Below, piece after piece: positions 15,240-59,066 of a stretch of DNA of 64,000 nucleotides. The position numbers and the translations under genes are program-made. The DNA comes from Sphaerodactylus townsendi (taxonomy: Eukaryota), in assembly GCF_021028975.2 (NCBI RefSeq), contig NC_059435.1, positions 65,038,001-65,102,000 on the forward strand, read 5' to 3'. Each line of letters starts with the position of its first letter. Position 1 is the first letter of the stretch. Below the pieces are notes generated by a model. The model was not told where the DNA came from and did not search any database. It was given only the letters and a program-made list of their open reading frames with translations.

Positions 15240-15506
15240 TATTGTCGAAGGCTTTCGTGGTCGGATTCAACTGGTTGTAGTGGGTTTTCCGGCCTGCATG
15301 GCCGTGGTCTGGTGGATCTTGTCCCAAACGTTTAGCCTGCATCTGTGGCCGGCATCTTCAGAGGCGTATCACAGAGAGAAGTGTGTTGCACACGGTGTCC
15401 AGACTTCTCTCTGGGATACACCTCTGAAGATGCCAGCCAGAGATGCAGGCACAACGCTGGGTCGACCAGACCACGGCCACACAGCCCGGAAGACCCACAA
15501 CAACCC
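15240..15506. mobile_element. Fold-back Penelope-derived element with two opposing degenerate hammerhead motifs
   Basis: Inverted arms ~15273-15381 and ~15402-15506; CTGAAGA-TGCC..GGC motif on both strands; direct repeat AAAGAATG on both sides (15232-15239, 15511-15518). Confidence 0.8.
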
Positions 15507-15579
15507 AAATAAAGAATGATGGGCTAACCATCCCTGTGTCCCCCCACCCCACCCCCTTGCAAATTTGCTGGCCAGGCGG

Positions 15580-16600
15580 CTATTCTGGCTGCAGATTGGC
15601 CGGACCAGGCTTCTAACAGATCCCCTCCAGCACAGAGCTCCCTTCTTTTCCGACCAGGTCCCGGGCATCTCCATCATCAGCCCAAAGGGGAGCTGAGTTT
15701 GCAAGCTGGCAGGCAGGCGAGGGGCGGGGGGGGGGGCTGCCGGTGATGTCAGAGCCGGGAGGCGGCGGTGATTGGATCTAATTAGGCTTTGCAGCAGCAA
15801 ATAAGCGCGCCGCCTGCCCAGATTGGCCTCAAAGTGGCTGGCGGAGCCAAACAGCTGGCAGCGAGAGGTGCAGGGGAAGCAGCGAAGAACAACAACAACC
15901 CACCCAAAAACAAGAGCCAGAAAGTCCGGCAAAGCCGGTGCAGCCGCAGCCCTGCTCGAGCCAGGCGGGGCGGAGCGCGCGAGGGGCAGCTTTCCCCGGC
16001 AGGGGGACCAGAGTTCCCGGTCAGCTGGGTCCCCCCCAGCCCCGATTTGCCTCTACCTGTGCAAAGTCCAAGACGGGAGCTTTTTAAATGCGCTGAAGCC
16101 CAGGCGGGGCAGCTCTTCGCAACTGCAAGCCCCGCAGAGCTGGGGAAGGAAAGTCCGCAGCCGCCGGGCAGAAGAGCATCTCCCCCCCCCCCCCCCCGGC
16201 AGAGACTGTCCCCCTTCCTTCCGACCGCGGCTATGACTTCCGTGCTGGGGACCAGCAGAGCCTCGGGGGGTCCGAGCGGCCAACTGCGAGGCAAGTCCAA
16301 GCGGAGGAGGCGGAGGCGATGCAAGAGGAAAGGTAAGCGCCGCGGGGGGGGGGGGGTCTCTCTTTTTGGCCGGCTGGGGCGCCTCCTCGCCCCCCCCCCC
16401 TTGCTGTCTTTTGGCCGCCCTGCTTGGAGGCTGACTTGTTGGAGGGGCCCAAAAATATAAAGTGCGCCTTTGCGACTCTTTCCTCCCCGGGTTGTGACTC
16501 TTCCTGGCTCGGGTTGCGGACGGGCGTTTGCAGAAATTCCCCCGGGCAGGTGCGGATGGGGAGCCGGAGCGTGCCTTATAAAAGGGATCAGATTTTACTC
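15580..16600 (+). promoter_or_regulatory. ADARB2: CpG island / promoter and 5' UTR of ADARB2
   Basis: GC- and CpG-rich non-repetitive block around exon 1; inverted CCAAT boxes (ATTGG 15595, 15771, 15822), GC box 15721-15729, TGATGTCA 15744-15751; TSS cannot be placed from sequence. Confidence 0.8.
16233..16332 (+). CDS. ADARB2: ADARB2 (ADAR3) coding exon 1, arginine-rich R-domain
   Basis: [33 protein letters not shown]+G aligns without gaps to the recalled human ADAR3 N-terminus [33 protein letters not shown](D); 100-nt phase-1 exon ending AAG|GTAAG; lies in a CpG island. Confidence 0.93.
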
Positions 16601-19600
16601 TAGATGGCTCTAGAAAACCCACTGGGAAGGGAAGGGTAAAAAACGCACGCACCTTTTTTCTGGTCTTCCCATGTGCTGGGATCCAAATAACCCAGGTCCC
16701 ACTGCACCTGGCAAGGAGCACAGGTGTTTCCTTTGACCCTGCATGACGGGAAGGGGGGGGGGGTAGCTGGAGCCATCCAAAAGAGCATGAAAGGCAGCCA
16801 GGATTTTAATACCACTTATCTCCATCCGATTTGCTGGTAGGCGCATACTTTTGCTGAGCCTGGCGTGCCACATGGCTCTTCGACTGTGCACAAACGAAGG
16901 TGCGCAGAGCATCGCTTCCTACCTGCCCGGATCCCAATCTCAGATGATATTTCCAAGGAGAAGATGTGGAGAGGGAAGCATCTTCCTGGCTGCCAGAAAT
17001 GCAGGGGAGGGGAGATGTGAACCCTCCGGTGTGCTGACTGGCAGGTTGCGCATAGCAAGCTGGCACTTCTGCGCCTCGTGGTGAATAATTTCGCCCAGGT
17101 TTGTGATATTTAAAGTTTGGGAGTGCATTAGCGCCGCTCCAGTTCTCGGAGGCGACCAAAATTCTATAAATGGGAGAAGAGCAATTATCCTAATCCAAGA
17201 AGAGAAAGAGCGGAGCTTGTGAGTGTCATAGGAAGCTGAAAGTCTGCCAGGAGATGAAAGGTTCTCTCAAAGCTGCCCTGTTTTCTCATAAAGGAAGGAT
17301 AAGATGTTGCAGGCAGATTGCTAATGCTTGTCTCCACTGTTGCTCTTAAGATACTCAGAATAGTTGAAAGTGGAGTAATTGACAAGTGCAAGGTAGAACT
17401 CTAGTTCGTGAAGGCAAATGCACTCAGCCGCCAAAGACTCCTGTCGGAGCAGTAAATTCCACCTCGTCTACACTTGTCATTGTTACAGAGGTCTTAGATA
17501 AGTTTCTGTCAGCTCACTCAATCACCTCGAGACTGATCTTTTTGTAGCTGTGATAAAAAACGTTTCTTTCCACCTCCGGATATTAAGCGTTTCCGATGGT
17601 TCGTGGCCTAAAATATCAATTGCACGCAGTGGCGTTTCTTAAATTCTGTTCTTTCAGATCCGGCATATGCTTGGCTGAATTTTTGGGGAACATTTAGGGG
17701 AGCTGCTCTGAGTGAGCCAAACCTTTCTTAAGTTGTGTTGCACATGTACTTTTCTTTCTTTTCAAGCATTCCACAGCAGTGAGTGACTTGTAGCCAAGTT
17801 AACCAACATGTGTATGGACAGGAATGGCAATACATCCATCACTGTTAAATATGTCATGTTAACATATTTGGCTGCCCTCTTTAAAAAAAAAGTCTTATTT
17901 TTTTATTCTATTTCAAAAGAAGCTTCTGCAAGTAATAATTGAAATGTCAATTAGGAGAAAAACCTAACGTAATTTTTAAAAATTTGTAGTAAATTGAACT
18001 CTGAAGTTTCACTGTTCCATTAAACCTCTCATATATTGTACTGAGCAAATTGGTGCTTAAATATTCAGGGATTATGGATTTTGCCTGTACTTCTGGGTAT
18101 CCTGAGTGCCTGTATCAGTTTGATGTGCTTTCTAGGAATTTTAAAACATAATGTTATTCTGCACTTGGCTTTTGAAATGAATCAACAATGAATTTCAGCC
18201 CAAATTCCACTCTTGGAATGTTTTGCATGTAGATTTCACTGGGTAACTCTGTTTTTAAGCCTGTAAGTTTGAAAACTCTGTAATGAACATTCAGTCCATC
18301 TTTAATATTTCCTTCTGCCTGTCTGCAAGTGCTCTTGCAAGGAGAAAGGATTATTATTGGAAAGCATCAATGTGATTGTTTGGGGCAGCCGCCGTTGGGA
18401 TTAAGTTATAGGTAGCTCCAAGCATCAATAACTATATGAGTGAACTATCAAACTTACTTCTTTGAAATAATTATATTCCAAAGTGCAAACTTCTGTGAAC
18501 AGTTATTTGATTTTCTGCCTTTGGGAGTGTACTGGTTGCAAAGACTCCTTTGACAGTTTCTTTTTGGAGATGCACAGAACCATGCTTGTAAAAATATATC
18601 GTTTCTGTCTCTTGGCAATAAAAACTGCAACTTAAAAACACATTCTGAAGGTAACCTGTTGAATTTGCTAGTTTTATAATGGCATACAGCAGTATTGGAA
18701 CAGACCCTGTTGTCACTGAAAGAGGTGGTATAATTTCATTTTTCAATTAAAAAGATGATTTGTTTAATGATAACCGTATACAAGGCAAGCAAGTACAGAT
18801 AATTGGTTGCAAGAATGAATGAAGTTTTTAAGCATCCCTACAGGATAAAACACCAACTAAATTTTGCTGTTTTCCTCAGTGTTTTCTGATTGTATCAGAA
18901 CACCATCTTTAAATGACTTGTAATTATTTCTATACTTACTGCACTCTAAGGTATATTATACTATTTATAGTAGATTTTGTCAATTACTCTTTTAATAAGT
19001 AAGCTATCTAGAATCCATTTTTTGAGATGTAAATGTCCACTTCTCACACACATACAAACAACATTTGCTGAGTCCATACTAAATTTAAGCCTGGCTTTGA
19101 AGGGTGTAAGAAAATGAAATATACAAACTAGTTGCTCGGATAACAAACGCTTGTGGATTACATACAGAAAACTGGACATTCCTTTTCAGTTGTCTAATGT
19201 AATGCTTTCATCTATCACATTGTAAAGGTGTGCTTGTATTTAATCAATAATGATTGACATGACTCTGAGGAGGCTGATGTCTGTCTGATTATATAGCTTG
19301 TTTTTTTGCCCTGTAGGATTTCTCCCTCTCAGTTTTATGTTTTAGTCTTGCAGCATACACCTCCGATGTATGGCTCTGTTTTGGTTTTTTTCCCCTTAAG
19401 CATTTTGTTAATAGGAATTGGCTGGCAAAGAGTTAAAGTGAAGTCATGTTTTATGAATAGCTAAAAATCAGGATATATTCAGAATTAAAGGATTTTGCTA
19501 CAGCAGTTTTTTTTATTTCAGTGGCTAATTCAGAAATTTTGCCACGTGATGTGTACTGTCTACAGATATTTGATCATTGTTTTGTACTTGGGGCACGATC

Positions 19601-22600
19601 CAGCCAAATCTGAACCTAAACATCCGCTGATGTTTTGTTCTCTTATAATCAGTGGGAATTGAAAGTGCTTAACTTGAGTTGCTGGATCATGCTCTCACTA
19701 AAGATCTTACTGGGGGTTTTATGGTGACTCAAAGTGTGATTTTGAGCCTTCAAGAGATGCTAAAAATCAAAACATTAACAAATGTCTATATTGCACTGCA
19801 GGTGTGTGTTTCTGTACACCAGATTTTTAAACGCACAATTTGAAAGTAGGCCGCACTTCAAAAAGGAAATGCATATGGATTAGGGCATGTTGCTTGCTAC
19901 CAATTTATCATAAGGCAAAAAAAAATGGCCTCCTGTTTAGAACTGTTGGTACGTAGTTGTCATTGAGGAATATATTTGCAATAACAGTCTGAAAAATAAA
20001 CATCTTGTCCTCTAATTCAACATGAATGTTACTGTTTCTTAAAAGCTTCCTTAAATAAGTTCCAGTATAAAAAATGGTTGTTTTGTGATGTTTTGTATAA
20101 TTGTACTAGTTCCTTTGTAGTTCCTATTTTAATGCCTATGTATTACATATGTTAGCATTAGTAAAATGGATTCACAGACTTGAAAGAATTTGCTCTTTAA
20201 TATGTACTAGCTTTTAAAAACATAACCAGGTTTTATTTTTATGTTGAATTCGCCCCTCTATCCCAAAGTAATAATCCAGACAACTAGAATAAGAGAGGCA
20301 GCCTGAAATTCAGTTTGTACAAAATAGAACGAAACCCATTTAAAGACCAATTTAAAAGACAATGTGATTATTTTGGGGACGAAAACACTTGAAGATGATG
20401 GAATCTTCATGCGCAGGTGTTGAGAAACTTTCAGCTACTGGTAAAATGTACCAAAGCAAAGAAAGTAATTCTTGAAAATATGGAGGTTGGAATTTTTCCT
20501 TGCTTTCTTATTTAGTACTTCACAATAGCAATTAAAATGACTAATTGTTTGGAGGGAGGGGGTCCTCCATTGTTAGACTAGATCTGAGGTGGTGAGAAGT
20601 AAACAAAAAGTGGAATGTTGCATTATGGAAGAGAAAGAGGAGCAGGTGTAAAATACGTGTCTTGAGAAATGAGATTATAATATAATGGCAGTTTCCATGA
20701 AGACTAATGAAATTTCAAGACAGTGTTAAATATGACACTGTTGAGCTTGCGTGGATTTCCATTGTCCTGTAATACCAAGGAAACAAATGTGTATTTTCCA
20801 TCTTGAGCTGAATTCAGGGACAAACGTTCCCTCCTACAACAGGCTCCTGGCTCGATTCAGACCGTGCTTTGGTTATCTTGCTTCCCTCCCCCCCCCTGCC
20901 CCGGCTGCTTGTGGAGAAAGATTGGATTTGGTGATAAAATGAAAATTGATTAAAACTTTACATCTAGCATCTTATTTTGAGCATCTTTTAACCCGCCATC
21001 CCCATCCTATGATTTTACCTCTGATTTCTAGTCACCTGTAGTAATGGCAGTAATTTGAGATTGTATCAAAAGCATTAGCTGCAATGGCTGAACTTAAATT
21101 TAGAATGAGGGGGAGAAAATATAGAACTCATAACTATGTATCTACACGGTGGTGAAGTATTACATAAATAACAGAGCTGCCTCTTTCTAGCAAAAAATGT
21201 CTAAATGGGGAAAGCTGGATGGGATGTAGGAGAGCAGTGAAATGAATCATTCTACTATTAGCAAAATATATATTTGGCCTTCAGGTTAAAATGTGTATTT
21301 AAAGGAATGAATTGCATATTTGATTACTTGTACAGTTCTACCTGCCAAATTGTATTAATTTGATTCCCAATAAAAAGGTGTTCACACTTAACAGGTTTAG
21401 GGTGGTGTGCTCCTCTTTTATTTTGCATGCCTTTTAAAAAGTGCTTGGAGACCAGTAACAGTCTGGCTTTTAAATTTTGTCCTCCTTCCCTTCTTAGATC
21501 ACCTGAAATCTCCCCCCCCCCCACACACACACACATATACCCTTGTCCTAGCTACTCACACGTAGAGCATATTTTAATTGAGATGAATGAAGTATTTTAA
21601 GGACCTGATGCTGGATTGTCTGAGCTGGTACTGACACGTGTGAAACCGTACATTGTTGAAAATGAGAGGCTGTATGAAAATGCCCAACGAAAGATCAAAG
21701 CCATATTAAGGGGGGGGGGCTGTGGGTTTTCTTACCCGTATTTCCTTTTTTTACAGCTGCATGTAATTTTTATGAGAAAAGTGGTTAGTAAATGGTAATA
21801 TTTAGAACAGTACAGTCTTTTCCTATTAACTCTTTATGAGATTGCATTACAAAGAAGTGTTACCCATTAGCAGCACAATGGATAGAACAACAACATACCC
21901 CTGACAAAACAGAAATGAACTACTGGATTGAGAAAATACATCCTATAAAAATCTCTTTTAACAGTGGAGGAGTCCTCCCATTTCCCCCCTAAATTCCCAT
22001 CCAATGGCCTTTTCTGTCACTCAAAGCAGCTTTAAACGTTTGTAGTGTGTATTTGCAAAATAAGAGAATAACTGTGTTCAAGAGTAAAGAAAAATACTTT
22101 AACCAGACGAAATATCCCTTGCCAGACAGACTTAATTATTGTGAGTAGCAATGAAGTTTTAATTCAGTCCCTTGTTTATAAAGATATAATAACTCCACCG
22201 TCTCCACAGCTTTTTACAAGCTTGTTGTGTTTGTAAGAGATGAGTTATCTGGATAGAAAGAGTCTTGATACGCATTGGCAGATCCATCATTCTAAAAGGA
22301 CCCGCGACGATCTTGCTGTGTTCTTCTGTAAAGTCTCTAGTTCCCATTCAAGTTGCACGATTTCTGATATAGAAAATACACGGATTGTATTCCTCCTTTA
22401 TCTCACCTTTTCCCGCTGGCCCTCTTTGTTTAAAATTCTAACAACCTAGCAGGTCTTGCAAGAAGCAAGTTGCAGTGATGGATGAAACATAGCAATTTGC
22501 TCATTTCTCAGTAGCTTGTGATCGTGTTCGTTATTCTCCCGGATAATATGCATTTAGTATGAATGTGTCAAGTAATTTTGAGAGCTTATGTTTGGTTTCT

Positions 22601-25600
22601 TAATGTCGCTCGGGTGAAGAGAAGGCTTTCTGGGTTTTCTTATTTGTGTGCTTGTTTTGATATACATGTGTAAAATTGCATTGTTGAAGCCTAAATTAAT
22701 ACAGTCATTGCTCAGGATGAGGAAAAGCAACTTAACTGAAGGAGTATCGTAGGAAATTTGCAGCCTTGGTTAGAAAAGTAGCTGAATGTTAGCTCATAGG
22801 AGACCTGAATGAAAAATTATGTTGAATACTCTCAAAGAGTGATTTGTTAATAGGTTGGTTTGCCCTTGTTAGAGGATGCCCTTCTGTTAAAGCGGCTAAA
22901 GAAATAAAGGGGATGAAAATGGTGTGCCTTGTATTCTTGGGAAAAGTGCACCTTATGACATTGTAGGTAGGTTCACAAACAGTGAGGATCTACAGAGCAG
23001 GTGAATTGGGGGTGGGAGGTCAGAAGAACAAAAGAATAGTCACCAGTGCTGGGGAACAAAGGACCAACTCCAGTGCTCCATGAGGCTCTGGGGTCCGGAA
23101 ATAGCTGGGGCCACCCTGTTCAGGATTGGTGACAATTCCGGCAGTGAAGAGAATGCTGCAGCCACTTGGCTGGAGCAAAAGATGATACAATTAACTGTTT
23201 TCTATTTCCTGCTGGCTCTGAACTGAAGGGATGGGATGCACAGGCATTAGCGTAGGTAGGAGTTATTGGTGAGGATAATGAGAAACTTGTTTACTGATAA
23301 CATAGTACCTTGTGCAGTCCAAGCCACAGCAGCACGGTGGAATAAATACATAGGATGTGGCGCACCAACGGTCATGTATCAAGCTCAAGGTCATGGCAAG
23401 GGCATTATAGCTGTTCTGAGTTAACCCAGGATGTTACTGGGCTCAAAGAGATGTTCTTGCTGAGTGTAGTTTTGAGGTTTTGCCCAAAGCTAACGTGAGA
23501 CAAGGTAGACACGGTAGGTGGAGCTGGGGATGGTCTATCTACGTGGCACCCTAAAGCCTTTTTGGGCGTTACTGAGCGTGATGCTGCGCTGCTGACCTAA
23601 GAGACAGCAGGGAGGGTTTTCTGAGTGGAATTGCAACTGATGTGCTGTGATAGGGACAGTGATGCTGTCTCAGCTGCTTGTGATGATGCAATGGCCGTGT
23701 TATCCTGTTTCAGCTTAGCATATCTAGAAGAGAGTAATATTTGCGCCTAAAAACCCTCATATTTTGTGCCAGGAGTGTCTGCCTACAAAGAACCTTCCTG
23801 TATAAACAGATCATCATTATTGTTTTCCAGGGTCTTTTTGCACTTTACTGTCAGGTGGTTACAGTTGAACAGGCAAGGGCAAAGTACTCCCAGGTGAGGA
23901 AACTGGCAGCTGATTGCATTTCTTAGAAAGTGGTCAAGGCTGGTAGGATCTGAGAATACACAGTTAATTCCAGACATTCAAGTTTTCTTTGGACTTTTGT
24001 TTCTCGACTACCAGGACAAACCGCTTTTGGGGGGGAATGCAAAGGAGTTGCAAGTTAAAAGGAGAGAGAAATCCCAAAGTGACAATGTAGACACAAACTA
24101 TCCTCTGAAATACTGTAATTTTCCTATCTGGTGTGTGCTTTACTTTAGGGCTTCAGTGGGGGGGTTGTCCTCGTGGGTCTCCTCTTTCTACACAAGTAGG
24201 TGTAAAATGCAAGTTGAAATCTCATTCAGTTACATCCTCACCATCTTTCAACTGATGAAGTATGCTTTAGCCCAGGAAAGTTAATGCTACAGCAAATCTG
24301 TTGTTCTTTATGGTGTCATAAAGCTCCATTTTTGTGTTTGCTGCAACAGAGTAACATAGCTACCTACCTGGAATTTGCTTCCAATGCAGTAAAGTTGCAG
24401 TGACTGATCTGTGAGTTACTGACAAGTTATGTTAATACCTGTGTGTAGACTTGAAAATGGTGGCACAATGTGTCAGACATCTTTTGCGGCTACGGCTCTT
24501 CTTTTCCATAAGGAGCACTAACCTAACCTTCAATTCTAAATTAACAAATAAAATGTGAAGCTAAACAGGTTTGATACAGAGGGCTTGGGAGAGAGTGTGA
24601 GTTATACGATGATCAGTCTCAAGCTGCAGACTATACAAATATAAAATCTGTGTTTCTTAGCAGAGGAAGTTTTTCATAATTATTAGCAGTGTCTCTGCAA
24701 GCATAAATGCAGCAATAGCTTCAGATAATCAGAGGAATGAAGAAGTTTCCTGGGAAAGAGAACGGAGTGGGTCGGATTGCCGAGTTCTATTTTCTGAGAC
24801 ATTGCAAAACAGTAATGGGGCATTATGCACTTTACGTGGCCAAGCCATTCGAGGCAGAGTTGCACCCTTCTAAACCCATTAATTCAATTAGACTTAGAAG
24901 GATGTAGCTATTTAAGATGTTGCCATTGATATTTAAACTGTAGAATCCTCCACCCCTGTGTTTTAGACATGAACCTGAGTCAAGACACCTCTCTGAATGA
25001 TGCTTTAAGGCTACGTAAGGTGAATGTTCTGTTCAAGTGAATAGAAGCAGACAGACTCACTGAGATTATTTTCTGAGCGAGGCACTAATCACTGTCAGAT
25101 ACAGTGACTAAAGTCATAGCTGTACAATGCAGTTGCCTTCATAAACCATGGTTGGGTGATCTTGTTGAACGGGTTGGTATTGGACCTTCAAATCAAAGTG
25201 AGCACAGCTGTAAAGAAGAACAGAAAACTCAGTCCATTTCGTTTCCACTTTGGGCTAATTTTGTCTTTTAGTCATTGTCTGAAAGCTTTAGCATATGACA
25301 TAAATACACAGTTGACATGTATTGCAATAAATGCCCCGACTACCATGGGTATCATCTGTTGTGAACATCTTCTATGGAAGACCTACTAAATGTTGAAAAA
25401 GCATAGCCACAGCAAGGTTTCTGTGGTTTCTAGAGGTCTCAAATAACAGAAATTAAAACTTGTCCATACTTCTTTGCAGTTTAAGTGTGGACTGTAAAAT
25501 ACGTTAAGTCGATGTGGTATGCTACTTAGGTTATCTAGTTCATGTTCCCACTCTGCCATAAAGTCCACTGGGTGACCTTGAGACGTTCATCCACTTTATC

Positions 25601-30844: not shown

Positions 30845-31352
30845 CTATTCTATTAAGCCTGAAGGAAGAACAAAGAAAGACGATGACAACATGAACAAAC
30901 TCTGGTTTGTTTGCAGTGAAAAGAAACCTGGCTAATTCCCAGGCTTGCACGTCTTCTCATCTCCCCTTCTGCAGTGTCAATATCAAGAAACTTCCTGGTT
31001 TAGAAAGTCTTCCGTCTAACTTTGTTCATTTGTTAGTTTTAATTTAGTTGACTTGTTGTGATGTCTGAAGTCAAGCACTTGAGCAAATCAGGTGTCTGGT
31101 TCTGGTGGGCTTTCCGGGCTGTGTCGTTGCTTGTCCATTCTGGTTTAGAATCCTACTTGCTGGGCAAGAACCAGGCCCAGTTTTAACATGCAGAATCTGA
31201 GAGCATCTTCGACAGTATTGAAAATAGCAAGGGAATTATGCATTGCCCCTGCAGGAAGTAGACTCACAGCAACTAGAACTTGCAAATCGTGGGGTAGGCA
31301 AATATAAAGACGTTATAACCAAAGTAGTCAAAGGTCGGAAGTTGCTTGCATC

Positions 31353-32950: not shown

Positions 32951-33042
32951 CTGAACAACTAAGATGGCAAACCTTCCCTTTCCATTGAGCTCACCAAGAC
33001 TATAAAAAATAGGGGGAGGGTGGAAAAATATCACCTAATAGA

Positions 33043-35825: not shown

Positions 35826-37342
35826 CCTCTTATTCTATCCTCTTCTTCTTCTATGGGAAGTGAGAATTCCCATCTCTTTCATACCATGTGACAAGCTTGG
35901 AACGGAGAGGCTGGATTTAAGAACAATTGCCTGTCCCTTCTTTCTTTGGAACTTCCCTCTTTTCCTTCCATTCCTGCATTTTACTTGTGCCTCAAGTGTG
36001 AATTTCTTGTGCAGGTTCTGAAGTCCAGGAGGATGTTAGTTTACGATGACTTGTGGCAGTGGCGGTGGGGGGGGGGGGCATAAGAGGGCAGTCTCCCCTG
36101 TTTTTGCCCTTATGTCTTACTTGGTTCCCAATTCTTCCCAACTGAGGAAGACAGCCCTGCAACTCAGAAGCTTGGCAGTCTACCAAACATAACTGGTTGG
36201 CAATCATCTGTTATATACCTGATAATATCCATAGTAATGCAAACACACGTATTCTGGTAATGTGAACATTGCCTGACATTGTAGAATTCAATTAAAGTTT
36301 GGCCCTGGGCTGCAAAAGGAGCCCATTTGACGCGCTTTTTAATATTAGGAATTAATGTCTGAGGTTAGAATTTGGCTTGTAAGTGTTTTAATTATCTGCC
36401 ACAGGCCTTTAATGCAAAGCCATCGTCAACTTTCCTTTTAAACATTCATGCTTTTTTTTTTCATTCTTAAGTAATTCCTTCAAACTACCTTTAGCCTCTA
36501 ATGTGTCACCTCCCTCTTTTTCGCCTTCCTTTTAAAAATTCTTTTTACTCTGTTGTGTTAATTGACAGATTAATTAGCAATTTGAGGTGCAGTCTTCCCC
36601 TCCCCCCCCCCCATTCAAGCCATTTATAACCTTGGCAGAAAAGCTGAGATGGAAATTCAGCCCGGTAATTAATCTCCTCATATCTCACATTCTTCAGGAA
36701 AAGGATTTTTCCTCATCCCTTTTTTTTTAATCTGGCCATTCAAGAGGCTCATTCACAACAGCAGGTTCTCCTGAGGAGGAGGAGGAGGAGGAGAAGGAGA
36801 AGGAGAAGCTGGACTCTTCCTGCCGATCACTCAGCCACTTGAACGTTTTCGCTACCTACCGTGAGTAGTGATTCCAGGACAGATGCCAGAATGAACATCC
36901 AGCTCTTTTGCCAGCCTGACACATAACAGGTGTTGGCTCGCAGCAAGCCTTTGCATATTACCTGAACAGCAGGTGGAATCTGTGCTGGTGGAATCAGTGT
37001 TCCAAGATCCAGCGCCCCTCTCTTCACACCCTCAGTCGAGGTAATTGTCAGGGAGATCAAGGCTCTCTGAAGGTAATATTCCCACAGAAAAATTTAAGAT
37101 CGGTAGAGAAAGGAGCTGACTTGTCAGTCTGCTGCAGTTTGAGTTGAACAGTTTCAAGAACAGCCTCGGCTGCAGAAGGAGACTCTGTAGTTGCTAAGAA
37201 TGGCACACGTTTAAGGGACGGTTCACAGGACACTGTCTATGGATGAGCTCAACTCTTACTTTGCCCCTCGCTCACACCAAGGGCCAGTCAAAACTGACTT
37301 TCCTCTGGACTGTCCTTAGCCCACATAGCTATTTTGTGTTCT

Positions 37343-37610
37343 GGTTGTGGTGGGTTTTCCGGGCTGTGTGGCCATGGTCTGGTGGATCTATTCAGGCCAG
37401 CCGAAAGTGAGTGCAGACTGTGGCTGGCATCTCTAGAGGTGTATCTAGAGGACATAGTGTGTGTAGCTAGCTCTCCTCTGTGACACACCTCTGAAGATGC
37501 CAGCCACAGATGCAGGCAAAACGTTAGGAACAAGATCCACCAGACCATGGCCTCACAGTCGGGAAAACCCAACACAACCAGATGAATCCGGCCGTGAAAG
37601 CCTTCAACAG
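37343..37610. mobile_element. Fold-back Penelope-derived element with hammerhead motif
   Basis: Inverted arms; + strand CCT-CTGAAGA-TGCCAGCCACAGATGCAGGC-AAAA-CG-TT-AGG (37488-37528); TSD TATTTTGTGTTCT / TATTTTGTTTTCT. Confidence 0.82.
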
Positions 37611-37755
37611 TATTTTGTTTTCTTTCATTTGAGGGCTAATAACAGCATGTGGGTGAATTTCATGAAACCACCTGGGGGCCAGGTTACGCCCCCTCTTACA
37701 CACAGATCTGGGACGTTTCTGGCTACTGATAGTGTTGGGAAAACACAGGGAGAAG

Positions 37756-37860
37756 TTTGGGTGCTGTGTGGTTTCTGGGCTGTATGGCCGTGTTCTAGCA
37801 GCATTCTCTCCTGACGTTTCGCCTGCATCTGTGGCTGACATCTTCATTGCCTTCGACAAT
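37756..37860 (-). mobile_element. Internally deleted Penelope-derived element with hammerhead remnant
   Basis: Minus strand TGAAGA-TGTCAGCCACAGATGCAGGC-GAAA-CG-TC-AGGA (37809-37846); TSD ACAGGGAGAAG (37745-37755, 37861-37871). Confidence 0.8.
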
Positions 37861-38092
37861 ACAGGGAGAAGCTGTTCACAGTCCTTCTAGATTCTCGTGT
37901 AATATAAATGTATAAGAGTTCCCCAGAACTTATGCTGCAGTGGAAGTTGTACAAGTCACTAAATCGAGACAATATTACTTCCTTCATCAGAGCCCTCAGA
38001 AACGGGGGGAAAAAATCTGGAGCTGCCTCTGCTGAGTCACAAGACTCATTTTTTTCTTTTTTTAAACTACCACTGCATTTTGGGGTCTGTAG

Positions 38093-41161: not shown

Positions 41162-41326
41162 NNNNNNNNNNNNNNNNNNNNNNNNNNNNNNNNNNNNNNN
41201 NNNNNNNNNNNNNNNNNNNNNNNNNNNNNNNNNNNNNNNNNNNNNNNNNNNNNNNNNNNNNNNNNNNNNNNNNNNNNNNNNNNNNNNNNNNNNNNNNNNN
41301 NNNNNNNNNNNNNNNNNNNNNNNNNN
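41162..41326. other. Assembly gap (165 N)
   Basis: Run of N. Confidence 0.99.
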
Positions 41327-46398: not shown

Positions 46399-46546
46399 CA
46401 GTGGTGGCGAACCTATGGCACTCCAGATGTTCATGGACTACAATTCCCATCAGCCCCTGCCATCATGGCCAATTGGCCATGCTGGCAGGGGCTGACGGGA
46501 ATTGTAGTCCATGAACATCTGGAGTGCCATAGGTTCACCACCACGG
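46399..46546. mobile_element. 148-bp near-perfect palindromic hAT MITE
   Basis: Symmetric about TGGCCAA|TTGGCCA (centre 46472/46473); TSD CTGTAGGT / TTGTAGGT. Confidence 0.92.
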
Positions 46547-50758: not shown

Positions 50759-51038
50759 AGAAGAAACGGAGTTTGGATTTATATCCCACTTTTCTCAACT
50801 GTAGGGCTCTCAAAATGACTTACAGACTCCTTTCCCTTCCTCTCCCCACAGCAGATACCTAGTGAGGTAGGCGGGGCTGAGAGAGTTTCGAAGAACTGTG
50901 ACTAGTGCAGGGTGACCCAGCAGGAGTGGGGAAACAAATCTGGTTCACCAGATAAGACTCCACCACTCATGTGTAGGAATGGGGAAATCACACCTGGTTC
51001 TCCAGATTAGAGTCCACTGCTCATAACTTCTACGCCAT
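50759..51038 (-). mobile_element. Squam3-like SINE
   Basis: Reverse-complement match. Confidence 0.82.
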
Positions 51039-51304
51039 GCTTACATTGGTTTGTTTGAATGTATGTTTCAGTGGTCCTTATTATGAGCTATTGAAAAGCT
51101 GTCGATTCCTTTGTAGAAGTGGAACACTTAGAAGGGGCAGAGATGTTGGTCATGTCATTGTGCCTATCACAGTCTATGCTTCTGCTTTTCCTGTGTTCTG
51201 TTTTCTCCTACCTAGTGTAGAACGTGGTCAAATATCCAGGAATCTGTGATGATATAGACAGAACACATTTGCAAGGACATCCGAGTTATCCAAATCCAAT
51301 CTAG

Positions 51305-51734
51305 GGCCCTTTCCGCACGGGCGGATTATGGCGCCCTAGGGACGCCACTTGGGAAGCGAGGTTTATGGGAAATGGCGGCTTGGAGCCCCTGCCATGCGAA
51401 CGGCAGCGGCTCCAAGGTGCCCTCCCCCCCTTCCGCCCTCTACCTACCGTGGCCGTGGCCGTCCGGCGCGTCGCCAAGGCCTGGGGACATGCCCCCCTGC
51501 CCTACGATGCTGGAGCACTCGTGCAGGGCAAGGGGGGGGGTGTCCCCAGGCCTCGGCGACGTGCCGGATGGCTACAGACACAGTAGGTCGGCTGAGCTAA
51601 TGCGCACCATGCCTCGCCTTCTTCCCGGTTGTTGCTCTGGGACCGCTCATCATAATGGGCCTGGCTCAGTGGGGTCGGGCGTGGGAATACGCTCGGGAAC
51701 CCAAACCCCATCAGCCAAGTAAGCAGAAATGGCC
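51305..51734. mobile_element. PIF/Harbinger-type MITE (family of 504-952)
   Basis: TIRs GGCCCTTTCCGC / GCAGAAATGGCC; TSD TAG/TTG; internal hairpin ~51442-51588. Confidence 0.82.
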
Positions 51735-53039
51735 TTGGTTTTATTTATTTATTTATTTAACCCCCCCCTCCCCCACCCATCCTCAAGGGGCTCAGGGCGG
51801 CAGTAAGGACTTCTTTCACACGTTTCAACTGGGTAGATGGACAAGACAGATCGTGCACTTAATTAAGCTTCTCATCCCTCCTTACTTTCGCATCTCAAAA
51901 GGTTATTGAGGTAGCAACATTTTTATTTGCAATGCTGTAAGCAGCATTGTCTTAGGGGAAGTATTGGGGTTCCGGGATGCAGGACTCCTTTTGTATGCGC
52001 TGTGGTGTATGCGAGCTGAGCATGAATATGCTCTTAAAGGCCGATATTCTTTTCAAGTAAGATGTCTGGCAAAAACCAGGCACAAATATGCTGACCCAGG
52101 AAAGCTGTGAGCTTCCAGGAATCCCTGCTTGTAAAGTTAAACAACCTGATGCCTTGTTAGGTATCTACTTTCGGTACACAGCTGACACCATCAGACCTTA
52201 TTCCTGGTTTCCTACAAATTGGCTGCTTGTCTACTTTTCCCCCCCACAAGTTCACAGCCTTAGAAGTGCTCAGACGAGGATCATTATAAAAATTCTTCCA
52301 CCTTCGGCTTTCTTAGCCTGCCTTCCAGTGATATTATTCTATTGATGAACTCCATATAGTTAACACCATTCATTTTATTCAAAAAGATGCTCTCTTTACT
52401 TCATTCCTCTTGCATTATTATCTCTGTCTCTTTAAACTCATTTAATGAAGTTTCTACTTCATGTTGTGCAAGTTATTTTGAATAAAATGTATTAGGCATT
52501 AGGACTCCATTCGTAATTTTCATGATCACCAGATAAAATGTCTGTCTAGTTTTAACAGAATAGTTTGAATATACCGGGAGCATCATCCGATGCAGAATAT
52601 CAGAGATTTCAGCAGACTTCATTATTTGTTCCATCTGGCAGTATTAAATTCAGATTGTATTGTGTTTTATCCAGGGCTTTATCAGGGTCCCATTCTTTTG
52701 TAACCTAATTTAGGGGCACTCCGATGCTGAACAGCAACTTCCAAATATTTTAATAAAATATTAACAGAGCTTCAGTGTTCAGTTGGTTCATTAGATAAAA
52801 CCTTTTTATTGACTTCAGCGTGCACTTGATTAGTTTTGCAGCCAAAGTTCTTTTAAAGGTCATTAATTTTCTTAACAGAAGTTCTTATTTAAAATTGCTG
52901 GGGTAGGTGCTGTATTTAACTAACCAACCCCCACCCCTCCATACAGATGGCAATGCCTCTTCTAAGATGCCTCTTCTGAGATTTAACATGTCTGCCATCT
53001 TTTTAAAAAGTTTTGAAAAACCTCCAGAGCCATGGTTAA

Positions 53040-53412
53040 TTTATATTTATTTATTTTATTTATAATCAGTTTTGTATGCCGCCCCTCCCCCGAAGGTCTC
53101 TGGGTGGTGAACAACACAATAAACAGACAATTGTATTAAAACCCCATTTTAAACAGCGGATTAAATAAAATTACATCCAGCATAAAACTTCATAAACCCA
53201 CCCTGGAAAGGAGGGCCCTCATAGAAATAAAGGGGCCCAGAGTGTAAAGGGGAGGGGAAAGGGGGAAAGGGGCGCACATCAGCGGCCGGCCCCTCCAAAA
53301 GCCCGGTGGAACAATTCAGTCTTACAGGCCCTGCGGAACTCTCCAAGATCCCGCAGGGCCCAGATAGCTGGTGGTAAAGTGTTCCACCAGGCAGGGACCA
53401 GGGCTGTAAAGG
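53040..53412 (-). mobile_element. L2-like LINE 3' fragment
   Basis: (ATTT)n tail, GCCGCCCCTCC, and antisense C-terminal coding-like segment GTTCCACCAGGCAGGG. Confidence 0.6.
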
Positions 53413-53914
53413 TATCCATCTTTAACTTTAACATGATGAAATCTTAGGCAGAATTACTGTATTTTTCACTGAGTTTGGACTGGAATGATTGTGCATAGGA
53501 TTACACTGTGCAACTCGAATGGTCTACTAAGGGTTTTTGATTCAGCTGGCAGCTTTCCCTTCTTTAAAAAGGTCTGACTTGATTTCAAACCTATAAAAAA
53601 GGAACAGAAAATGTGAGGGCACTTTTCCAGAGTGGACAATGCCTGCAACTACATCTAGAAATCTGTCTCCTATTCAGAAGCTTGCCCTTGATTTCCTTGG
53701 GAGTAAGTCCTGTTTGCATTACAATACAGTGCATATTGATTCATAAATAAGTCCAATTGAATTCAGTGAACCTTCATTCTTGGGAAATTTGAATGGGTCA
53801 GCCCTTTGACTTCATAGTGAGCACAATTTACCCACCACCACCATGGAAAAACTTCTTCCTATAGTGATTCACTGGAGTCCAAAGCAGAGCTGAAGGTTAT
53901 CTAACTAGAAATTG

Positions 53915-54037
53915 GCGAAGGCTTTCACGGCCGGATTCAACTGGTTGTGGTGGGTTTTCCGGGCTGTGTGGCTGTGGTCTGGTGGATCTTGAACAAAATC
54001 CACCAGACCACGGCCACACAGTCCGGAAAACCCACCA
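53915..54037. mobile_element. Fold-back Penelope-derived element with the centre (ribozyme region) deleted
   Basis: Arms join directly at GGATCTTG|AACAAAATCC; perfect 13-bp TSD TAACTAGAAATTG (53902-53914, 54038-54050). Confidence 0.82.
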
Positions 54038-57000
54038 TAACTAGAAATTGTTTGTCAGGAGGCATAGATATAAGGTAGTATACAGTTTCTTTCTTTCTAT
54101 CTATACTAAAGCAATTCATTTAGAGTTGGAAAAGGCTATATATGAAAGGACAGGAGACCTGAGTTCAGATCCCCACTCAGCCATGAAACTCACTTGGGAG
54201 ACGAGTGTCATGAGCCTTCCCTGGTGCAGATGATTGAAAGCCATGCGGACCACATGTATGACTTGAGCATCCACAGATATGGAGGCATCAAAAATGTGTA
54301 GAATGAGCTGAGCTAGAACCAATAAATTCCATCAGTTCAATGAGTTGGACCCACACCTGCCTTACAAGAAAGGAAAGGGGCTTCTGCTCATGGGAAGAAA
54401 TGAGGCACATTTTCCAATTTGCTCTTGATACACAGCTTTCCTTTTGCTTCTTTACCATGCTGTTCCCAAGTATCCCCTGGCCCACAGGGCGAGGAATGGA
54501 TCCTGCTAGTCCAAGTAGACAGAACCAGATTTAATTGTCTAACTGGGTATATTTGCAGATTTATCATAGTCAACTATGATTCCTTTCTCATGGCTAGCAA
54601 AGATTCCTTCGGCTTTTTAGAATAACGAACATTTTTGGTGGTGGTTACTTCTCTCCATGGATACCTTTGGCAGTGGGTACCTTTTAACAATAATGAAAAT
54701 GTTTTGCAAAAGCCCCCCCCCCCCCAGCTATAGATTCATGCTTATGTGTACAACCTGGTTGAAGAATCATAAAGCATTATATTTTTGTGTCATTCACTTT
54801 GCCCCATGAATATCTCCAGCTGTTTTCCCTGTCCAGCGTTCTTGTTACTGTAGTTCATGCCAGCCGACAAGAAATATTGGTACTAAGGAGTGACACCTTG
54901 TGGATTCTTCTCACTTGTTTACCTGCCTTGATGTCTCTCTCCCCTCTCCTCCTTTTCCTGCAGGCCTATAAAAATAATTTCTTACGGAGACGCTTACTCT
55001 TGCTCTGAACTTCTATTGTAATAGACACTGACCTTTGAAACCATCAGGCCCACAGAGGCAACATTATAGACTTTAGATCCCTGGGTGCCCCTTAGCTGTC
55101 ATAATGAAGGAAGTTTACTGTGGGAAAGTGAATGGCGCCAGCATGTTTTGAACCATATGGTAATTATCTGCTATCTGTGCAAAAGATATAAAGCGTTGTT
55201 TACCGGTTGTGAAAAGAGCATCTGAGAAGGGATTCCCTGGAGAAGTTAGGAAGAGAGATTTGGCACAGTGGCTGCTCTTCAGATGGCTGGTAATAGACCC
55301 TATAAATTTGGAATATGCTGTTGTTAATCAGCAGAGATTGGAGACGGTTGGCTCATAATGTTTCAGCTTAAAGGGGCAGGTGATTGTCTTGCCAAGCTGA
55401 GGTTCCCCCCCCCCATAACTGTAATTGAATTATGCAAATGGCTTGTGTGGGGGGAGAACAGAAATGTGGGAAATGATGTTCTTAACTCTTTGAAATCAAC
55501 AGTGCATTTAATAGAGTGCAGGGAAAATCCCTGCTGATAAAACTGGGAAATGGATTTTTTTAAAAAAAGAAAGAAAAGAGAAGAGAAGAGAAAGAAATAT
55601 ATTAAAAGGAACTTTTCTAAATGACAGAGCTCTCCTATGCTCATTTACGCTTTTTGAATGAGCATAATTCAAGTGGAAGCTTTTTCCACTTGCTTGCAAG
55701 GATCGCACAATCTGTTTCTGACAACGTCGCTTCTGACAAAGGAGGAAGAAATTGCGGCCATGCTTGGAAGGGGAGCCCCACCACAGTGCAGAATTCCAAA
55801 ATGTTTAATTCAGGGTGTTAAATTATTCGGAAAAAATGGCCAAGTCTCATTTGAACAAATCTCCTTAAACCACTTTAGCATCTTAATAACTAGAGAATGT
55901 GTTGTGAGATTCCAGCAGCACAATTTAAGGGCTTGTCAGGCATTTTCACTAATATTGGCCTGTGTGCTACAGTAGACAGGCAGAGCAGCCTGAAGCTATT
56001 GGTGATAAATTCCATGGCAATCTTGTTCTCTGCCAGGATTTATCCGAGCCAGTAGGGATAAGTGATGCTTTTTTTTGTTTACCACTGATTTTTTGGCAAG
56101 GAGTTTCTATGATAATTGAGCTCATCTTATCGCAGCATTCTTCTCATTCACCTATTGACTTGAGAATAGGAAATAAAGGCCACATTCATTGCCATGTCAT
56201 GTCCCCACAGAGGCTTTTGTTATTTCCCCATTAAGCGTCAGTTTCCCCAAAGTTAGCATGGTTTTAGTTCATTGTTAAGTCTTCTACAGGAGGGTATTTT
56301 AGTTAGCCCCTTTCCCTTTAAGATATTTCCCAATAGGCAGGTTCCTTTCTTTACCCAGCAATCCCCTGTTTTAGTTCTAGCCAGTCAATCAGAGTGAGGT
56401 GCTAAGGGTAGTTGGAGACTGGAATATCTCAGTGATACATACATATTACTATATCGTGGTCCATAGGACACTTTTAGTGAAGTTTCTAACTGCAAAGCTA
56501 GAACTGCTAGACAAAGAACTGGAAAAGGAAACTGGAAAGCTGAAGCAAGACACAGTGGACTCTTCTTGAAAGCAACTCAAAGAGCAAGACAGCAGACTAC
56601 AGCCTTTCCAAACCTTGCCCTCAAGACAAGCAAGTACTCTGATTTAGATAGACCCAAGAGAGGAGTTAGGGTCTTGATTCTCTCCAGTAATAAACCTATC
56701 ATATGAACTGTTGAACCTGGCTTGTGTCTCTCCCACTCTGTCCTCGCCAAGTACAGGATACCAAAAATAGATTCACTTGGGGGGCAGAACATGCCACGTG
56801 ATGACATTTACTATTTGGGAGATGGTCATGTGTATATACAAGTCTCAAGAGTGTTAGTGCTAACATATTTCCTATGCTCAGAAATGTGTCCAATCATGAT
56901 TGTCATGAATTTGCCTTCCTACTGTACTCTATGTATCTGAATGGAACTCAAGAATTTTTTTGCATGTACCATCAAGAAAAAAAGGGGATATCTTAAATCT

Positions 57001-58874
57001 GCATTTAAGTCATTTGCAATAATGCAACACCTTTTGTGTAAAAACCACTCCCCACCTTTCAAAGTGTGCGTCTTGTATTAAAGTGGACTTTCTTTTTGGC
57101 CAATACAATATATATATATATTTGGAAGAAGGACCCATGTAATACTTTTATTAGAAATCATCTGGTTTTTGAGTTCTCCCTCTGAGCTGGAGGACATCTT
57201 TCTGGGTAATTCCCACCATTGACTGGAGGCAGGAGCAAGATCTTTCTGTTTTTTGTTTCCAAGGATTCCTCAGTTCTGTTCCTGCCTTACGGGAGAGCAG
57301 TAACTTGTTGCTTATACTATATAGGACAACTTTTTGGGACTCTAACTCTTCATGATTGACACCAAACCAGTTGACCTGCATTTGTGTTTTCCACCTTGGA
57401 ACTGCTTGTTGCTCTGGTTAGTTGCCAGCCAGACTGCAACAGTGACTCTGGGAGGTCCCAGAAAATTTTCCTCCATCTTAAAGGGAGAATGACCATTGGT
57501 ACCTACCTGTGAAATGTCCTTCTCTTCTGGATGTCAAAGGACATCTTGCCCTCCCCATGTCATCGACTTTAGAAGACAGACAACAATCAGAATGCATCTA
57601 TGTGGATGTTCTGATTAAGAGTTGTCTCATGTTTGACAAGGTTCTTGTTAACTCTACAACTGCTTATGCTTGTTCTATTTTAATTGTTTATATGTTTGAG
57701 TGTTATTTACTTTTAATAGTTCAAACATTTTCTTACGATATGAATACAGCTCTTGGGAGTCTCGGAACTGAGGAATCCTGGGTAACTCCCACAGAAAACA
57801 GGAAACAAAAGGTTTCCTTGGTCAATGGGAGACAGAAATGAGAGCTTTTGTTTCCTGTTCCTGTTTCCTGTACCTTCCATAGTACCAATGATCATTAGAG
57901 AACTCTTCTTAATTCTGGTTTTTAAAATGGGGGGGGGCATACTTTTCTTAACACCTCTTGTCTACATATGTAGACAGTCATCAGGTTTACATTGACAAGT
58001 GTAGAGCTATAATCTGGTTGAACTTTTTGACCTTCTGGGGAAAAGAATGGGAAGTGAGAATCTCCAGTTGAAAATATTGACGAAATTTCTCTTGAATACT
58101 GGTTTTATTTGTTTATCTAAAAATGCTATGCGTGTTGTAGATTACACTTCACTGATTTGATGCAAATTAGTGCTGTTGGATCAGCATCTCAGCCTGTTAA
58201 CATTTTTTTAAATATAGGTTTTAGACTTCCAGTTCTGAGATTATTCTGTCTTGCAATAAACAGATCAGTTCACAGTTTGATTCTTCTTTCCCTCCTCCCT
58301 TTAAAAAAAAGGGGGGGAAGCAGAGTCGATTTTCATACACAAGAAGAGAGCACGCTTCAGCACATAGAGGGTTAATTTTTGTCTCTGTCTTAATCAGCAG
58401 GGACCTTTAGTTAGCAAGAGGGTGCCAGTTCATTTGCAGAGCACATTGAGCGGCACACATCCAACAATCAAAACCTGCTTTGTGAGCATCTGGGAGCTTT
58501 TAATTGAAAACTTGAAACTGCTAGATTTGACGCTTCATTTATTCAAAATACTATAATCCCACCTTTCCACAACTGTTCAGTGTGGCTCATGATATTATTA
58601 AAACAGATATCTGCAAAGGCACCGCATAATTAAATCTATACATGCAAAAGCATTCCAAAAACATAACAATCGGCACAAAGTTCATATAAGCTTGAAAGTG
58701 ATTTTGGTTTCTGTAATTTATTTGGTGTAAATTAATGTGTCCCTATTGAGAGTAGCCTGTGGGTAAGCCATTTTGAAATTTCATCTGTAAGCATAATTTA
58801 AAGGGAAGTTGGGGATCAAGGGTTGAGTGGGAACAGAGATTGTTGAACTCCACCGGTCCAACACACTGGAGTTA

Positions 58875-59066
58875 TCCAATGTATTGCCGAAGGCTTTCAC
58901 GGCTGGAATCGCTGGGGTGCTGTGTGGTTTCCGGGCTGTATGGCCGTGTTCTAGCAGCATTCTCTCCTGATCCTCTGAAAATGCCAGCCACAGATGCAGG
59001 CGAAATGTCAGAAGAGAATGCTGCTAGAACGCAGCCGTACAGCCCGAAAACCACACAGCACCCCAT
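58875..59066. mobile_element. Fold-back Penelope-derived element with near-intact hammerhead motif
   Basis: Inverted arms; + strand TCCT-CTGAAAA-TGCCAGCCACAGATGCAGGC-GAAA-TG-TC-AGAA (58971-59013); TSD ACTGGAGTTA (58865-58874, 59067-59076). Confidence 0.82.

What the first reader, a model, noticed from the sequence alone, without database searches (positions are those of the whole stretch)
15240..59066. Family of short fold-back Penelope-derived elements carrying head-to-head minimal hammerhead ribozymes
Seen: five 105-270 bp elements (15240-15506, 37343-37610, 37756-37860, 53915-54037, 58875-59066), each flanked by its own 8-13 bp direct repeat. Each is built from inverted arms, only one of which carries the tail GGCCGTGAAAGCCTTCGACAATAC. 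The copies give the consensus UCCU-CUGAAGA-U-GCCAGC(CACAGAU)GCAGGC-GAAA-CG-UC^AGGA, a type I hammerhead: stem I UCCU/AGGA, stem II, and a stem III reduced to the palindrome ACGU. There are two subfamilies (GGTTGTGGTGGG.. and GGGGTGCTGTGTGG..). Established: Penelope-like retroelements carry minimal type I hammerheads with palindromic stem III, thought to cleave as dimers, and can insert with inverted pLTRs. Inference: these are either repeated, extremely truncated inverted-pLTR insertions or a self-propagating retrozyme-like non-autonomous family. In either case a ribozyme is encoded on both strands and the RNA carries its own antisense inhibitor. Every copy here has at least one core lesion.
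Basis: partly seen in the sequence, partly recalled or inferred. Interest (0 to 1): 0.85.

Follow-up and report, generated by a model that had tools for sequence, protein, structure and literature searches.

The report
Dead truncated Penelope retrotransposon insertions
The five short elements are real. They are ordinary, old, dead stubs of a Poseidon/Penelope-like retrotransposon of the kind characterised in the green anole, and their inverted arms and one-sided tail follow from a published insertion mechanism, not from a new self-propagating ribozyme element.

Summary
Five insertions, each flanked by a target-site duplication, carry the hammerhead box and a one-sided tail of about 34 nt, where chance predicts none.

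The arms are colinear with the published Anolis Poseidon_Ac consensus, from about 27 nt before its ATG to nt +84. The tail matches its nt ~85-118. That is the stretch between the two internal reverse-transcription start sites mapped in vitro by Frangieh et al. 2024 (PMC11167929), whose enzyme nicks and extends both target strands.

In all five copies the outer ends are fixed: +84±2 on one side and about +115 to +123 on the other. The inner junctions all differ. This is the opposite of what a fold-back unit that copies itself would show.

In e3 and e5 the inverted arm holds template sequence that the direct arm lacks, so the arms were made as two separate cDNAs.

Only e1 and e2 carry head-to-head hammerheads. 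e5 and e3 have one each (e3's is cut at its 5' end), and e4 has none. Every motif has a core lesion, and Rfam reports no hammerhead.

The hammerheads lie on opposite strands, so the elements are not retrozyme-like. The copies end at +118 to +123, short of the 172 nt of ORF that the enzyme needs in vitro, so they were probably immobile from the moment of insertion.

First-stage notes from other windows of this genome describe similar elements. This is a known phenomenon of low interest.

The parts
15240..15506 (-). e1, subfamily A. Tail 15240-15272. Direct (tail) arm to about 15385. Inverted arm about 15395-15506. The central ~20 nt are not palindromic. Damaged hammerhead motifs lie on both strands (about 15320-15368 minus, 15417-15462 plus). 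The duplication is 15230-15239 / 15509-15518.
37343..37613 (+). e2, subfamily A. Inverted arm 37343 to about 37450. Direct arm about 37455-37580. Tail 37581-37613. Damaged hammerhead motifs lie on both strands. The duplication is 37330-37342 / 37611-37623, overlapping the tail end by 3 nt.
37756..37860 (+). e3, subfamily B. The inverted arm 37759-37846 covers template nt about -5 to +84. It is joined directly to a 14-15 nt piece of the tail end, 37847-37860 (template about +105 to +118). The arms do not overlap, so there is no fold-back. One hammerhead on the minus strand is cut at C3. The duplication is 37742-37755 / 37858-37871.
53909..54040 (-). e4, subfamily A. Tail plus direct arm 53909-53990 (template about +36 to +118). 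Inverted arm 53993-54040 (about +34 to +84). The junction is 2 nt. There is no hammerhead in either arm. The duplication is 53902-53915 / 54038-54051 and overlaps the element ends.
58875..59066 (-). e5, subfamily B. Long tail plus direct arm 58875-58972 (template about +28 to +123). Inverted arm 58968-59066 (about -10 to +84). One hammerhead on the plus strand has G8 replaced. The duplication is 58862-58874 / 59064-59076.
31098..31124 (-). A doubtful 27-nt fragment resembling the outer end of a subfamily A arm. No duplication was seen around it.
   Evidence: nhmmer E = 0.17

Best explanation
Each element is one independent, extremely 5'-truncated insertion of a Poseidon/Penelope-like retrotransposon. 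The two families are relatives of Anolis Poseidon_Ac.

Inferred mechanism: the element's GIY-YIG/RT protein nicks both target strands a few to 14 bp apart, and each freed 3'-OH primes reverse transcription inside the element's RNA. One strand starts at the distal start site (about +115 to +123 of the ORF). The other starts at the proximal site (about +84). The ~34 nt between the two sites is therefore copied on one side only, which is the 'tail'. Both cDNAs run towards the 5' end of the RNA, stop early in or near the hammerhead region, and are joined by repair. The result is two head-to-head arms with a junction specific to each locus, framed by one target-site duplication.

The hammerhead is a passenger. 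It sits at the ORF start inside the copied segment, so it appears on both strands only when both arms are long enough.

The copies end at the RT start site and lack the downstream part of the RNA element the protein needs. They are therefore probably unable to move again, and they have since decayed.

Shown here: the anatomy, the homology, the fixed outer ends and the variable junctions. Taken from the literature: the two start sites and extension of both strands in vitro. Inferred: that the two strands use different start sites in one event, and how the cDNAs are joined.
For: - Homology to Poseidon_Ac. Its published consensus begins ATG...; the window arms align with it base for base from the CUGA box to about +84, and the tail aligns with nt ~85-118 (aligned by eye at about 80% identity). 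The translated arms match its N-terminus without gaps at matching positions, 46% and 57% identity.
- The predicted cut site is 26 nt after the ATG, as the paper states for PAc.
- The paper's Fig. S2 legend places the ~34-nt tail at nt 85-119, between the two RT start sites. The enzyme cleaves and extends both strands.
- Outer ends sit at the same template positions in 5 of 5 copies, and each copy has exactly one tail.
- One duplication frames each whole element.
- Inner ends all differ: about -27, -23, -5/+105, +34/+36 and -10/+28.
- In e3 and e5 the inverted arm contains template sequence that the direct arm lacks.
- Craig et al. 2021 describe an inverted 5'-truncated copy plus a one-sided 30-40 bp tail as typical of PLE insertions.
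- The minimal RNA template needs the first 172 nt of the ORF, and the copies stop at +118 to +123.
Against: - In vitro the paper saw no difference in start-site use between the two strands. Independent choice would therefore also give fold-backs with no tail or with two. Exactly one tail in 5 of 5 copies (at most 0.03 under independent choice) needs a coordination that the paper does not describe.
- e1 and e2 have similar overall lengths (267 and 271 bp) and junctions only about 4 nt apart. At 20-25% divergence a common fold-back ancestor for this pair alone cannot be strictly excluded.
- No genome-wide sample of copies could be obtained.
- No autonomous partner lies in the window.
- The nucleotide alignment to Poseidon_Ac was made by eye, not computed.
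Confidence: 0.8

Rival explanations
1. The elements are a non-autonomous fold-back unit family (retrozyme-like or SINE-like). A roughly 270-bp palindromic element would be transcribed and retrotransposed as a whole by a Penelope enzyme, with hammerheads used for processing.
For: e1 and e2 are nearly the same length, with junctions within about 4 nt of each other and ~20-nt central segments that are about 53% alike in the direct orientation. A 2026 preprint argues that animal retrozymes derive from PLE pLTRs. First-stage notes from other windows of this genome mention similar ~250-bp palindromic copies (unchecked).
Against: - Across the five copies the outer ends are constant and the junctions vary. 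Unit retrotransposition with 5' truncation predicts the reverse.
- Informative sites in e1 and e2 give no arm-specific shared ancestry: 2 unit, 1 per-element, 1 cross. The two inverted arms are no closer to each other than inverted arms are to direct arms.
- The hammerheads lie on opposite strands, so no transcript holds two in sense. Retrozymes are tandem direct repeats.
- A fold-back transcript buries the motif in a hairpin of -160 kcal/mol.
- The copies lack ORF nt +119-172, which the template needs.
- All motifs are damaged.
Confidence: 0.07
2. The elements arise by snap-back (hairpin) synthesis. A single cDNA primed at the distal site would fold back on itself and self-prime the second strand, producing the inverted arm.
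For: e4 has only a 2-nt junction, and e1 and e2 have short palindromic centres. These are compatible with a hairpin turn.
Against: - In e3 and e5 the inverted arm carries template segments that are absent from the direct arm (-5 to +84 against +105 to +118, and -10 to +27 in addition), so it cannot be a copy of the direct arm.
- In e4 the inverted arm is the longer of the two.
- A snap-back copy has no reason to stop at +84, whereas an RT start site is mapped there.
Confidence: 0.06
3. Each element is two unrelated insertions in opposite orientation that landed at the same spot at different times, or the inverted repeats arose by chance.
For: e2 and e3 lie only 143 bp apart, each with its own duplication. 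Clustering of separate insertions therefore does happen here.
Against: A single duplication frames both arms in 5 of 5 copies, and no arm has a duplication of its own. The orientation is always head to head, with the RT-start ends outward. The arms of one element belong to the same subfamily. Chance expectation for the motifs is 0.
Confidence: 0.02

Closest known systems
Poseidon_Ac (PAc), the Penelope/Poseidon-clade PLE of Anolis carolinensis (Repbase consensus; Frangieh et al. 2024, PMC11167929)
   Same: A hammerhead overlaps the ATG, with the cut site 26 nt after it. The N-terminal coding sequence is colinear with the window arms. An AC-rich stretch precedes about +84, and the ~34-nt tail between the two RT start sites ends in the conserved GAAAGCCTTCGACAA motif. 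Targets are duplicated.
   Different: The window copies are about 80% identical to PAc (aligned by eye) and fall into two other, older subfamilies. Their box reads CUGAAGA where PAc has CUGAGGA. They are stubs of 105-271 bp with no RT/GIY-YIG ORF. Their own autonomous masters were not found.
Canonical PLE insertion architecture (Evgen'ev & Arkhipova 2005; Arkhipova 2006; Craig et al. 2021, PMC8557442)
   Same: Strong 5' truncation, an adjacent inverted 5'-truncated copy forming inverted repeats, a 30-40 bp tail at one end only, and a hammerhead in the pLTR.
   Different: The window copies are the minimal extreme: both arms are 15-135 nt long and there is no tandem pLTR.
Minimal PLE hammerheads (Cervera & de la Pena 2014, PMC4209133)
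   Same: Type I topology, a bulged base 5' of a 6-bp helix II, and helix III reduced to a short palindrome, so that activity is expected only as a dimer.
   Different: Every copy here has a core lesion. Helix II has an A-A mismatch. No Rfam hammerhead model reports them.
Animal non-LTR retrozymes (Cervera & de la Pena 2020, PMC7229834; Li et al. 2026 preprint)
   Same: Both are short non-coding sequences derived from PLE pLTRs that carry type I hammerheads.
   Different: Retrozymes are tandem direct repeats whose two same-sense ribozymes excise a unit RNA that circularises. The window motifs lie on opposite strands and the junctions are locus-specific.
L1 twin priming (recalled from my own knowledge of the L1 literature, not checked here)
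   Same: Both ends of a staggered target break prime reverse transcription, which yields an inverted 5' segment inside one duplication.
   Different: In L1 the second primer anneals at a variable internal site and the two segments are adjacent and non-overlapping. Here both primers start at fixed internal sites 34 nt apart, and the arms usually cover the same template region.

Membership tests
Penelope-like elements, Penelope/Poseidon clade (as truncated copies) | Sequence homology to a PLE with an RT plus GIY-YIG ORF | tested here: met
   The arms and tail are colinear with the start of the Poseidon_Ac consensus (by eye). The peptides are 46% and 57% identical without gaps at matching positions.
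Penelope-like elements, Penelope/Poseidon clade (as truncated copies) | An RT and GIY-YIG endonuclease ORF present in the copy | tested here: not met
   The copies are 105-271 bp stubs. The window has no PLE ORF. The only RT remnant, at 3191-4091 on the minus strand, has a weak RVT_1 hit and looks like a LINE. Absence of the ORF is expected for 5'-truncated copies.
Penelope-like elements, Penelope/Poseidon clade (as truncated copies) | A 30-40 bp tail at one end only, bounded by the two RT start sites | tested here: met
   Four copies have a 33-39 nt tail and e3 keeps only the last 14-15 nt of it. In 5 of 5 it is on one side only. The boundaries match nt ~85-119 of PAc.
Penelope-like elements, Penelope/Poseidon clade (as truncated copies) | An inverted 5'-truncated copy next to the direct copy, within one target duplication | tested here: met
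   described as typical
Penelope-like elements, Penelope/Poseidon clade (as truncated copies) | An AT-rich target with a 5'-ATT-3' nick motif | tested here: inconclusive
   The duplications are AAAGAATG, TATTTTGTGTTCT, ACAGGGAGAAG, TAACTAGAAATT and ACTGGAGTTA. Some are AT-rich and contain ATT, but five sites are too few to judge.
Hammerhead ribozyme (type I, minimal PLE variant) | An intact catalytic core (C3 U4 G5 A6 N7 G8 A9 ... G12 A13 A14, A15.1-U16.1, H17) | tested here: not met
   Each of the six motifs has at least one replaced or missing core position.
Hammerhead ribozyme (type I, minimal PLE variant) | Recognition by the curated covariance models | tested here: not met
   No hammerhead family was reported at gathering score over the whole window, or at E<=10 over the regions of e1, e2/e3 and e5. 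The only sub-threshold hits are hairpin-shaped miRNA models.
Hammerhead ribozyme (type I, minimal PLE variant) | Self-cleavage | not testable with these tools
   The homologous PAc motif cleaves only with protein present in vitro. Minimal PLE hammerheads cleave weakly as dimers.
Retrozymes | Two or more hammerheads in the same orientation (direct or tandem repeats) bounding a unit RNA | tested here: not met
   Where two motifs exist (e1, e2) they lie on opposite strands. There is no tandem copy in the window.
Retrozymes | Circular RNA of unit length | not testable with these tools
MITE / fold-back DNA transposon | Symmetric terminal inverted repeats with a duplication of fixed length | tested here: not met
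   The ends are asymmetric (one-sided tail), the duplications vary in length (10-14 bp at <=1 mismatch; 8 bp exact for e1), and e3 has no inverted repeat.

The most novel reading that the evidence does not exclude
The five copies may carry in vivo footprints that the published in vitro work did not see. There are two.

1. Exactly one tail in 5 of 5 two-armed copies suggests that the two target strands use the proximal and distal RT start sites in a coordinated, asymmetric way. In vitro there was no strand preference.

2. Nine of the ten inner arm ends fall between about -47 and +36. Three of them lie within 6 nt of the hammerhead cut site (+30): both arms of e4 and the direct arm of e5. [quoted passage not shown]

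If a genome-wide census confirmed this, such stubs would be a natural record of ribozyme action during Penelope retrotransposition.
Probability: 0.15. Interest if true: 0.5.

Novelty: already known. Interest (0 to 1): 0.13.

Why it matters
It matters little beyond annotation. These copies should be masked as truncated Penelope/Poseidon insertions. They should not be read as a new ribozyme element, as miRNA-like hairpins (they draw sub-threshold miRNA hits), or as regulatory palindromes.

Their modest value is as genomic corroboration of the internal-initiation, two-strand model of PLE insertion. They also suggest a cheap genome-wide test: histograms of arm ends and counts of tails per insertion. 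That test would show whether start-site choice is coordinated between strands and whether hammerhead cleavage shapes the template in vivo.

Tried and rejected
- **Rfam.** The whole window at gathering score and three sub-regions at E<=10 reported no hammerhead. The only hits are hairpin-shaped miRNA models below threshold, which I take to reflect the fold-back shape.
- **The look-up of sequencing runs.** There is therefore no read-based census, no expression data and no species identification.
- **The search of protein representatives with the 39-aa e2 peptide.** This gave two hits. Both are spurious ORFs over solo (one-armed) related copies on short contigs of one ENA metagenome assembly (L001, L002). 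They show that the module and tail motif occur in another DNA sample and that solo copies exist, but they give no full-length element.
- **Metagenome DNA scans.** The tail pattern had 0 hits. The hammerhead-box pattern had 1 hit (L003), which matches only 25 nt inside what looks like a microbial gene, so I treat it as chance.
- **The search for homologous proteins.** Two blank searches with the e2 and e3 peptides. This is uninformative because of the tool's word and length limits.
- **Autonomous partner in the window.** The ORFs of 150 aa or more include no PLE RT or GIY-YIG.
- **Rejected readings.** Unit fold-back family, snap-back synthesis and two separate insertions; the reasons are under rival explanations.
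- **Steps not taken.** I did not run a computed nucleotide alignment to the Poseidon_Ac consensus, because that would have meant typing a long sequence into a tool. I aligned the first ~118 nt by eye and computed only the short peptide comparison.
Full report

Yes. The five elements read as described.
- The 27-nt hammerhead box occurs 5 times at up to 3 mismatches, and the 24-nt tail occurs 4 times. Shuffled sequence gives 0 of either.
- Each whole element is framed by one direct repeat of 10-14 bp with at most one mismatch; e1's exact core is 8 bp.
- BLAST confirms two subfamilies, e1/e2/e4 and e3/e5.
- An nhmmer census with a profile built from the arms finds nothing else in the 64 kb apart from a doubtful 27-nt piece at 31098-31124.
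- The assembly gap (41162-41326) is more than 3 kb from any element or duplication, so nothing depends on it.

Some corrections are needed.
- Head-to-head hammerheads exist only in e1 and e2.
- e5 has one motif, e3 has one cut at its 5' end, and e4 has none.
- e3 is not a fold-back, because its two arms cover non-overlapping parts of the template.

**2. What the arms are**

Frangieh et al. 2024 (PMC11167929) supply the Repbase consensus of Poseidon_Ac (PAc) from Anolis carolinensis.

Its first 118 nt align by eye, base for base, with the window arms at about 80% identity. The same ATG lies inside the CUGA-box/helix II junction. The GAAACGUC^AGGAG segment is shared. An AC-rich stretch ends near +84, followed by a segment ending in GAAAGCCTTCGACAA.

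The translated arms match the PAc N-terminus without gaps and at matching positions. Identity is 46% over 39 aa for e2 and 57% over 30 aa for e5.

The predicted cut site is 26 nt after the ATG, exactly as the paper states for PAc. The arms are therefore the pLTR/ORF-start module of Poseidon-like elements from two families other than PAc itself.

No RT/GIY-YIG ORF lies in the window. The RT remnant at 3191-4091 on the minus strand looks like a LINE.

**3. Anatomy in template coordinates (A of the ATG = +1)**

Every element has its RT-start ends facing outward and its template 5' ends meeting in the middle.

Outer ends:
- The tail-less arm ends at +84±2 in 5 of 5 copies.
- The other arm ends at about +115 to +123.
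- The extra TCCAATG at the left of e5 is templated: PAc reads ...ACACATTGAAC at that position.

Inner ends:

| Element | Inverted arm | Direct arm |
|---|---|---|
| e1 | about -27 | -31 or further |
| e2 | about -23 | about -45 |
| e3 | -5 | +105 |
| e4 | +34 | +36 |
| e5 | -10 | +28 |

**4. Mechanism**

The paper shows several things in vitro.
- The PAc protein nicks and extends both target strands.
- Reverse transcription starts at two adjacent sites inside the RNA.
- The genomic ~34-nt tail (nt 85-119) is the sequence between those two sites.

Craig et al. 2021 list an inverted 5'-truncated copy and a one-sided 30-40 bp tail as standard features of PLE insertions.

The simplest reading of the window copies follows from this. 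One strand primes at the distal site and the other at the proximal site. Both cDNAs abort early, and repair joins them inside one duplication.

Several observations rule out the alternatives.
- Fixed outer ends with variable inner junctions are the reverse of what a unit that is transcribed and 5'-truncated would show.
- In e3 and e5 the inverted arm holds template sequence missing from the direct arm, and in e4 the inverted arm is the longer one. The inverted arm is therefore not a snap-back copy of the first cDNA.
- No arm has its own duplication, so these are not double hits at one site.
- For e1 and e2, the pair with similar size and junctions, informative sites show no arm-specific shared ancestry (2 unit, 1 per-element, 1 cross). 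The two inverted arms are no closer to each other than inverted arms are to direct arms. The central ~20 nt of the two elements differ far more than the arms do.

**5. Ribozyme and retrozyme ideas**

The motif has the published minimal PLE form: a bulged base before a 6-bp helix II, and helix III reduced to a 4-nt palindrome, so it is expected to act only as a dimer.

No Rfam hammerhead model reports it at any threshold tried. The weak miRNA-model hits reflect the hairpin shape.

In e1 and e2 the two motifs lie on opposite strands. Any transcript therefore has one sense motif plus its complement, and e2 RNA folds into a hairpin of -159.9 kcal/mol (z = -13.7).

Retrozymes need same-sense tandem ribozymes, and that feature is not met here.

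The in vitro template requires the first 172 nt of the ORF. The copies end at +118 to +123, so they probably could not be copied again.

Arm-to-arm identity of about 68-91% indicates old insertions.

**6. What remains open**

One tail in 5 of 5 copies is more regular than independent start-site choice would give (at most 0.03). In vitro no strand preference was seen.

Nine of the ten inner ends fall within -47 to +36, and three lie within 6 nt of the cut site. With five copies these are only hints. They define the 'novel case' and the census proposed as the next step.

**7. Other sources**

First-stage notes from other windows of this genome describe what appear to be the same kinds of copies. 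They are unchecked, and I used them only as a sign that the family is dispersed.

Two related solo copies on ENA metagenome contigs (L001, L002) show that the module and tail motif occur in another DNA sample and that one-armed copies exist.

Attempts to obtain reads or further copies failed.

**Verdict**

This is a correct observation of a known phenomenon. Novelty: already known. Interest: low.

Noticed in passing
window 15400-16800: A GC-rich, CpG-island-like block (GC 0.60-0.69) lies directly beside e1. It has long overlapping ORFs on both strands, and none hits Pfam. It may be a promoter or first exon of a host gene, in which case e1 sits at its edge.
   Followed up: partly
window 3191-4091 (minus strand): Remnant of a reverse transcriptase ORF with a weak RVT_1 hit (E = 6.7e-05, below the Pfam cutoff). 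It looks like a LINE, not a Penelope element, and is broken into at least two ORFs.
   Followed up: partly
window 4490-5100: A second GC-rich stretch with overlapping ORFs of 70-145 aa in several frames on both strands. I did not examine it further.
   Followed up: no
window 37613-37756: e2 (subfamily A) and e3 (subfamily B) are separate insertions, each with its own duplication, only 143 bp apart. This could be chance or a local target preference.
   Followed up: no
window 31098-31124: A 27-nt fragment resembling the outer end of a subfamily A arm, with no visible duplication (nhmmer E = 0.17).
   Followed up: partly
L001:545-680 and L002:500-640: Two short contigs of one ENA metagenome assembly (ERZ27260066) each carry a solo copy of a related Penelope module. 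The hammerhead box looks intact, and at least L001 ends in the same conserved tail motif. This is presumably DNA of an unidentified animal in that sample.
   Followed up: partly
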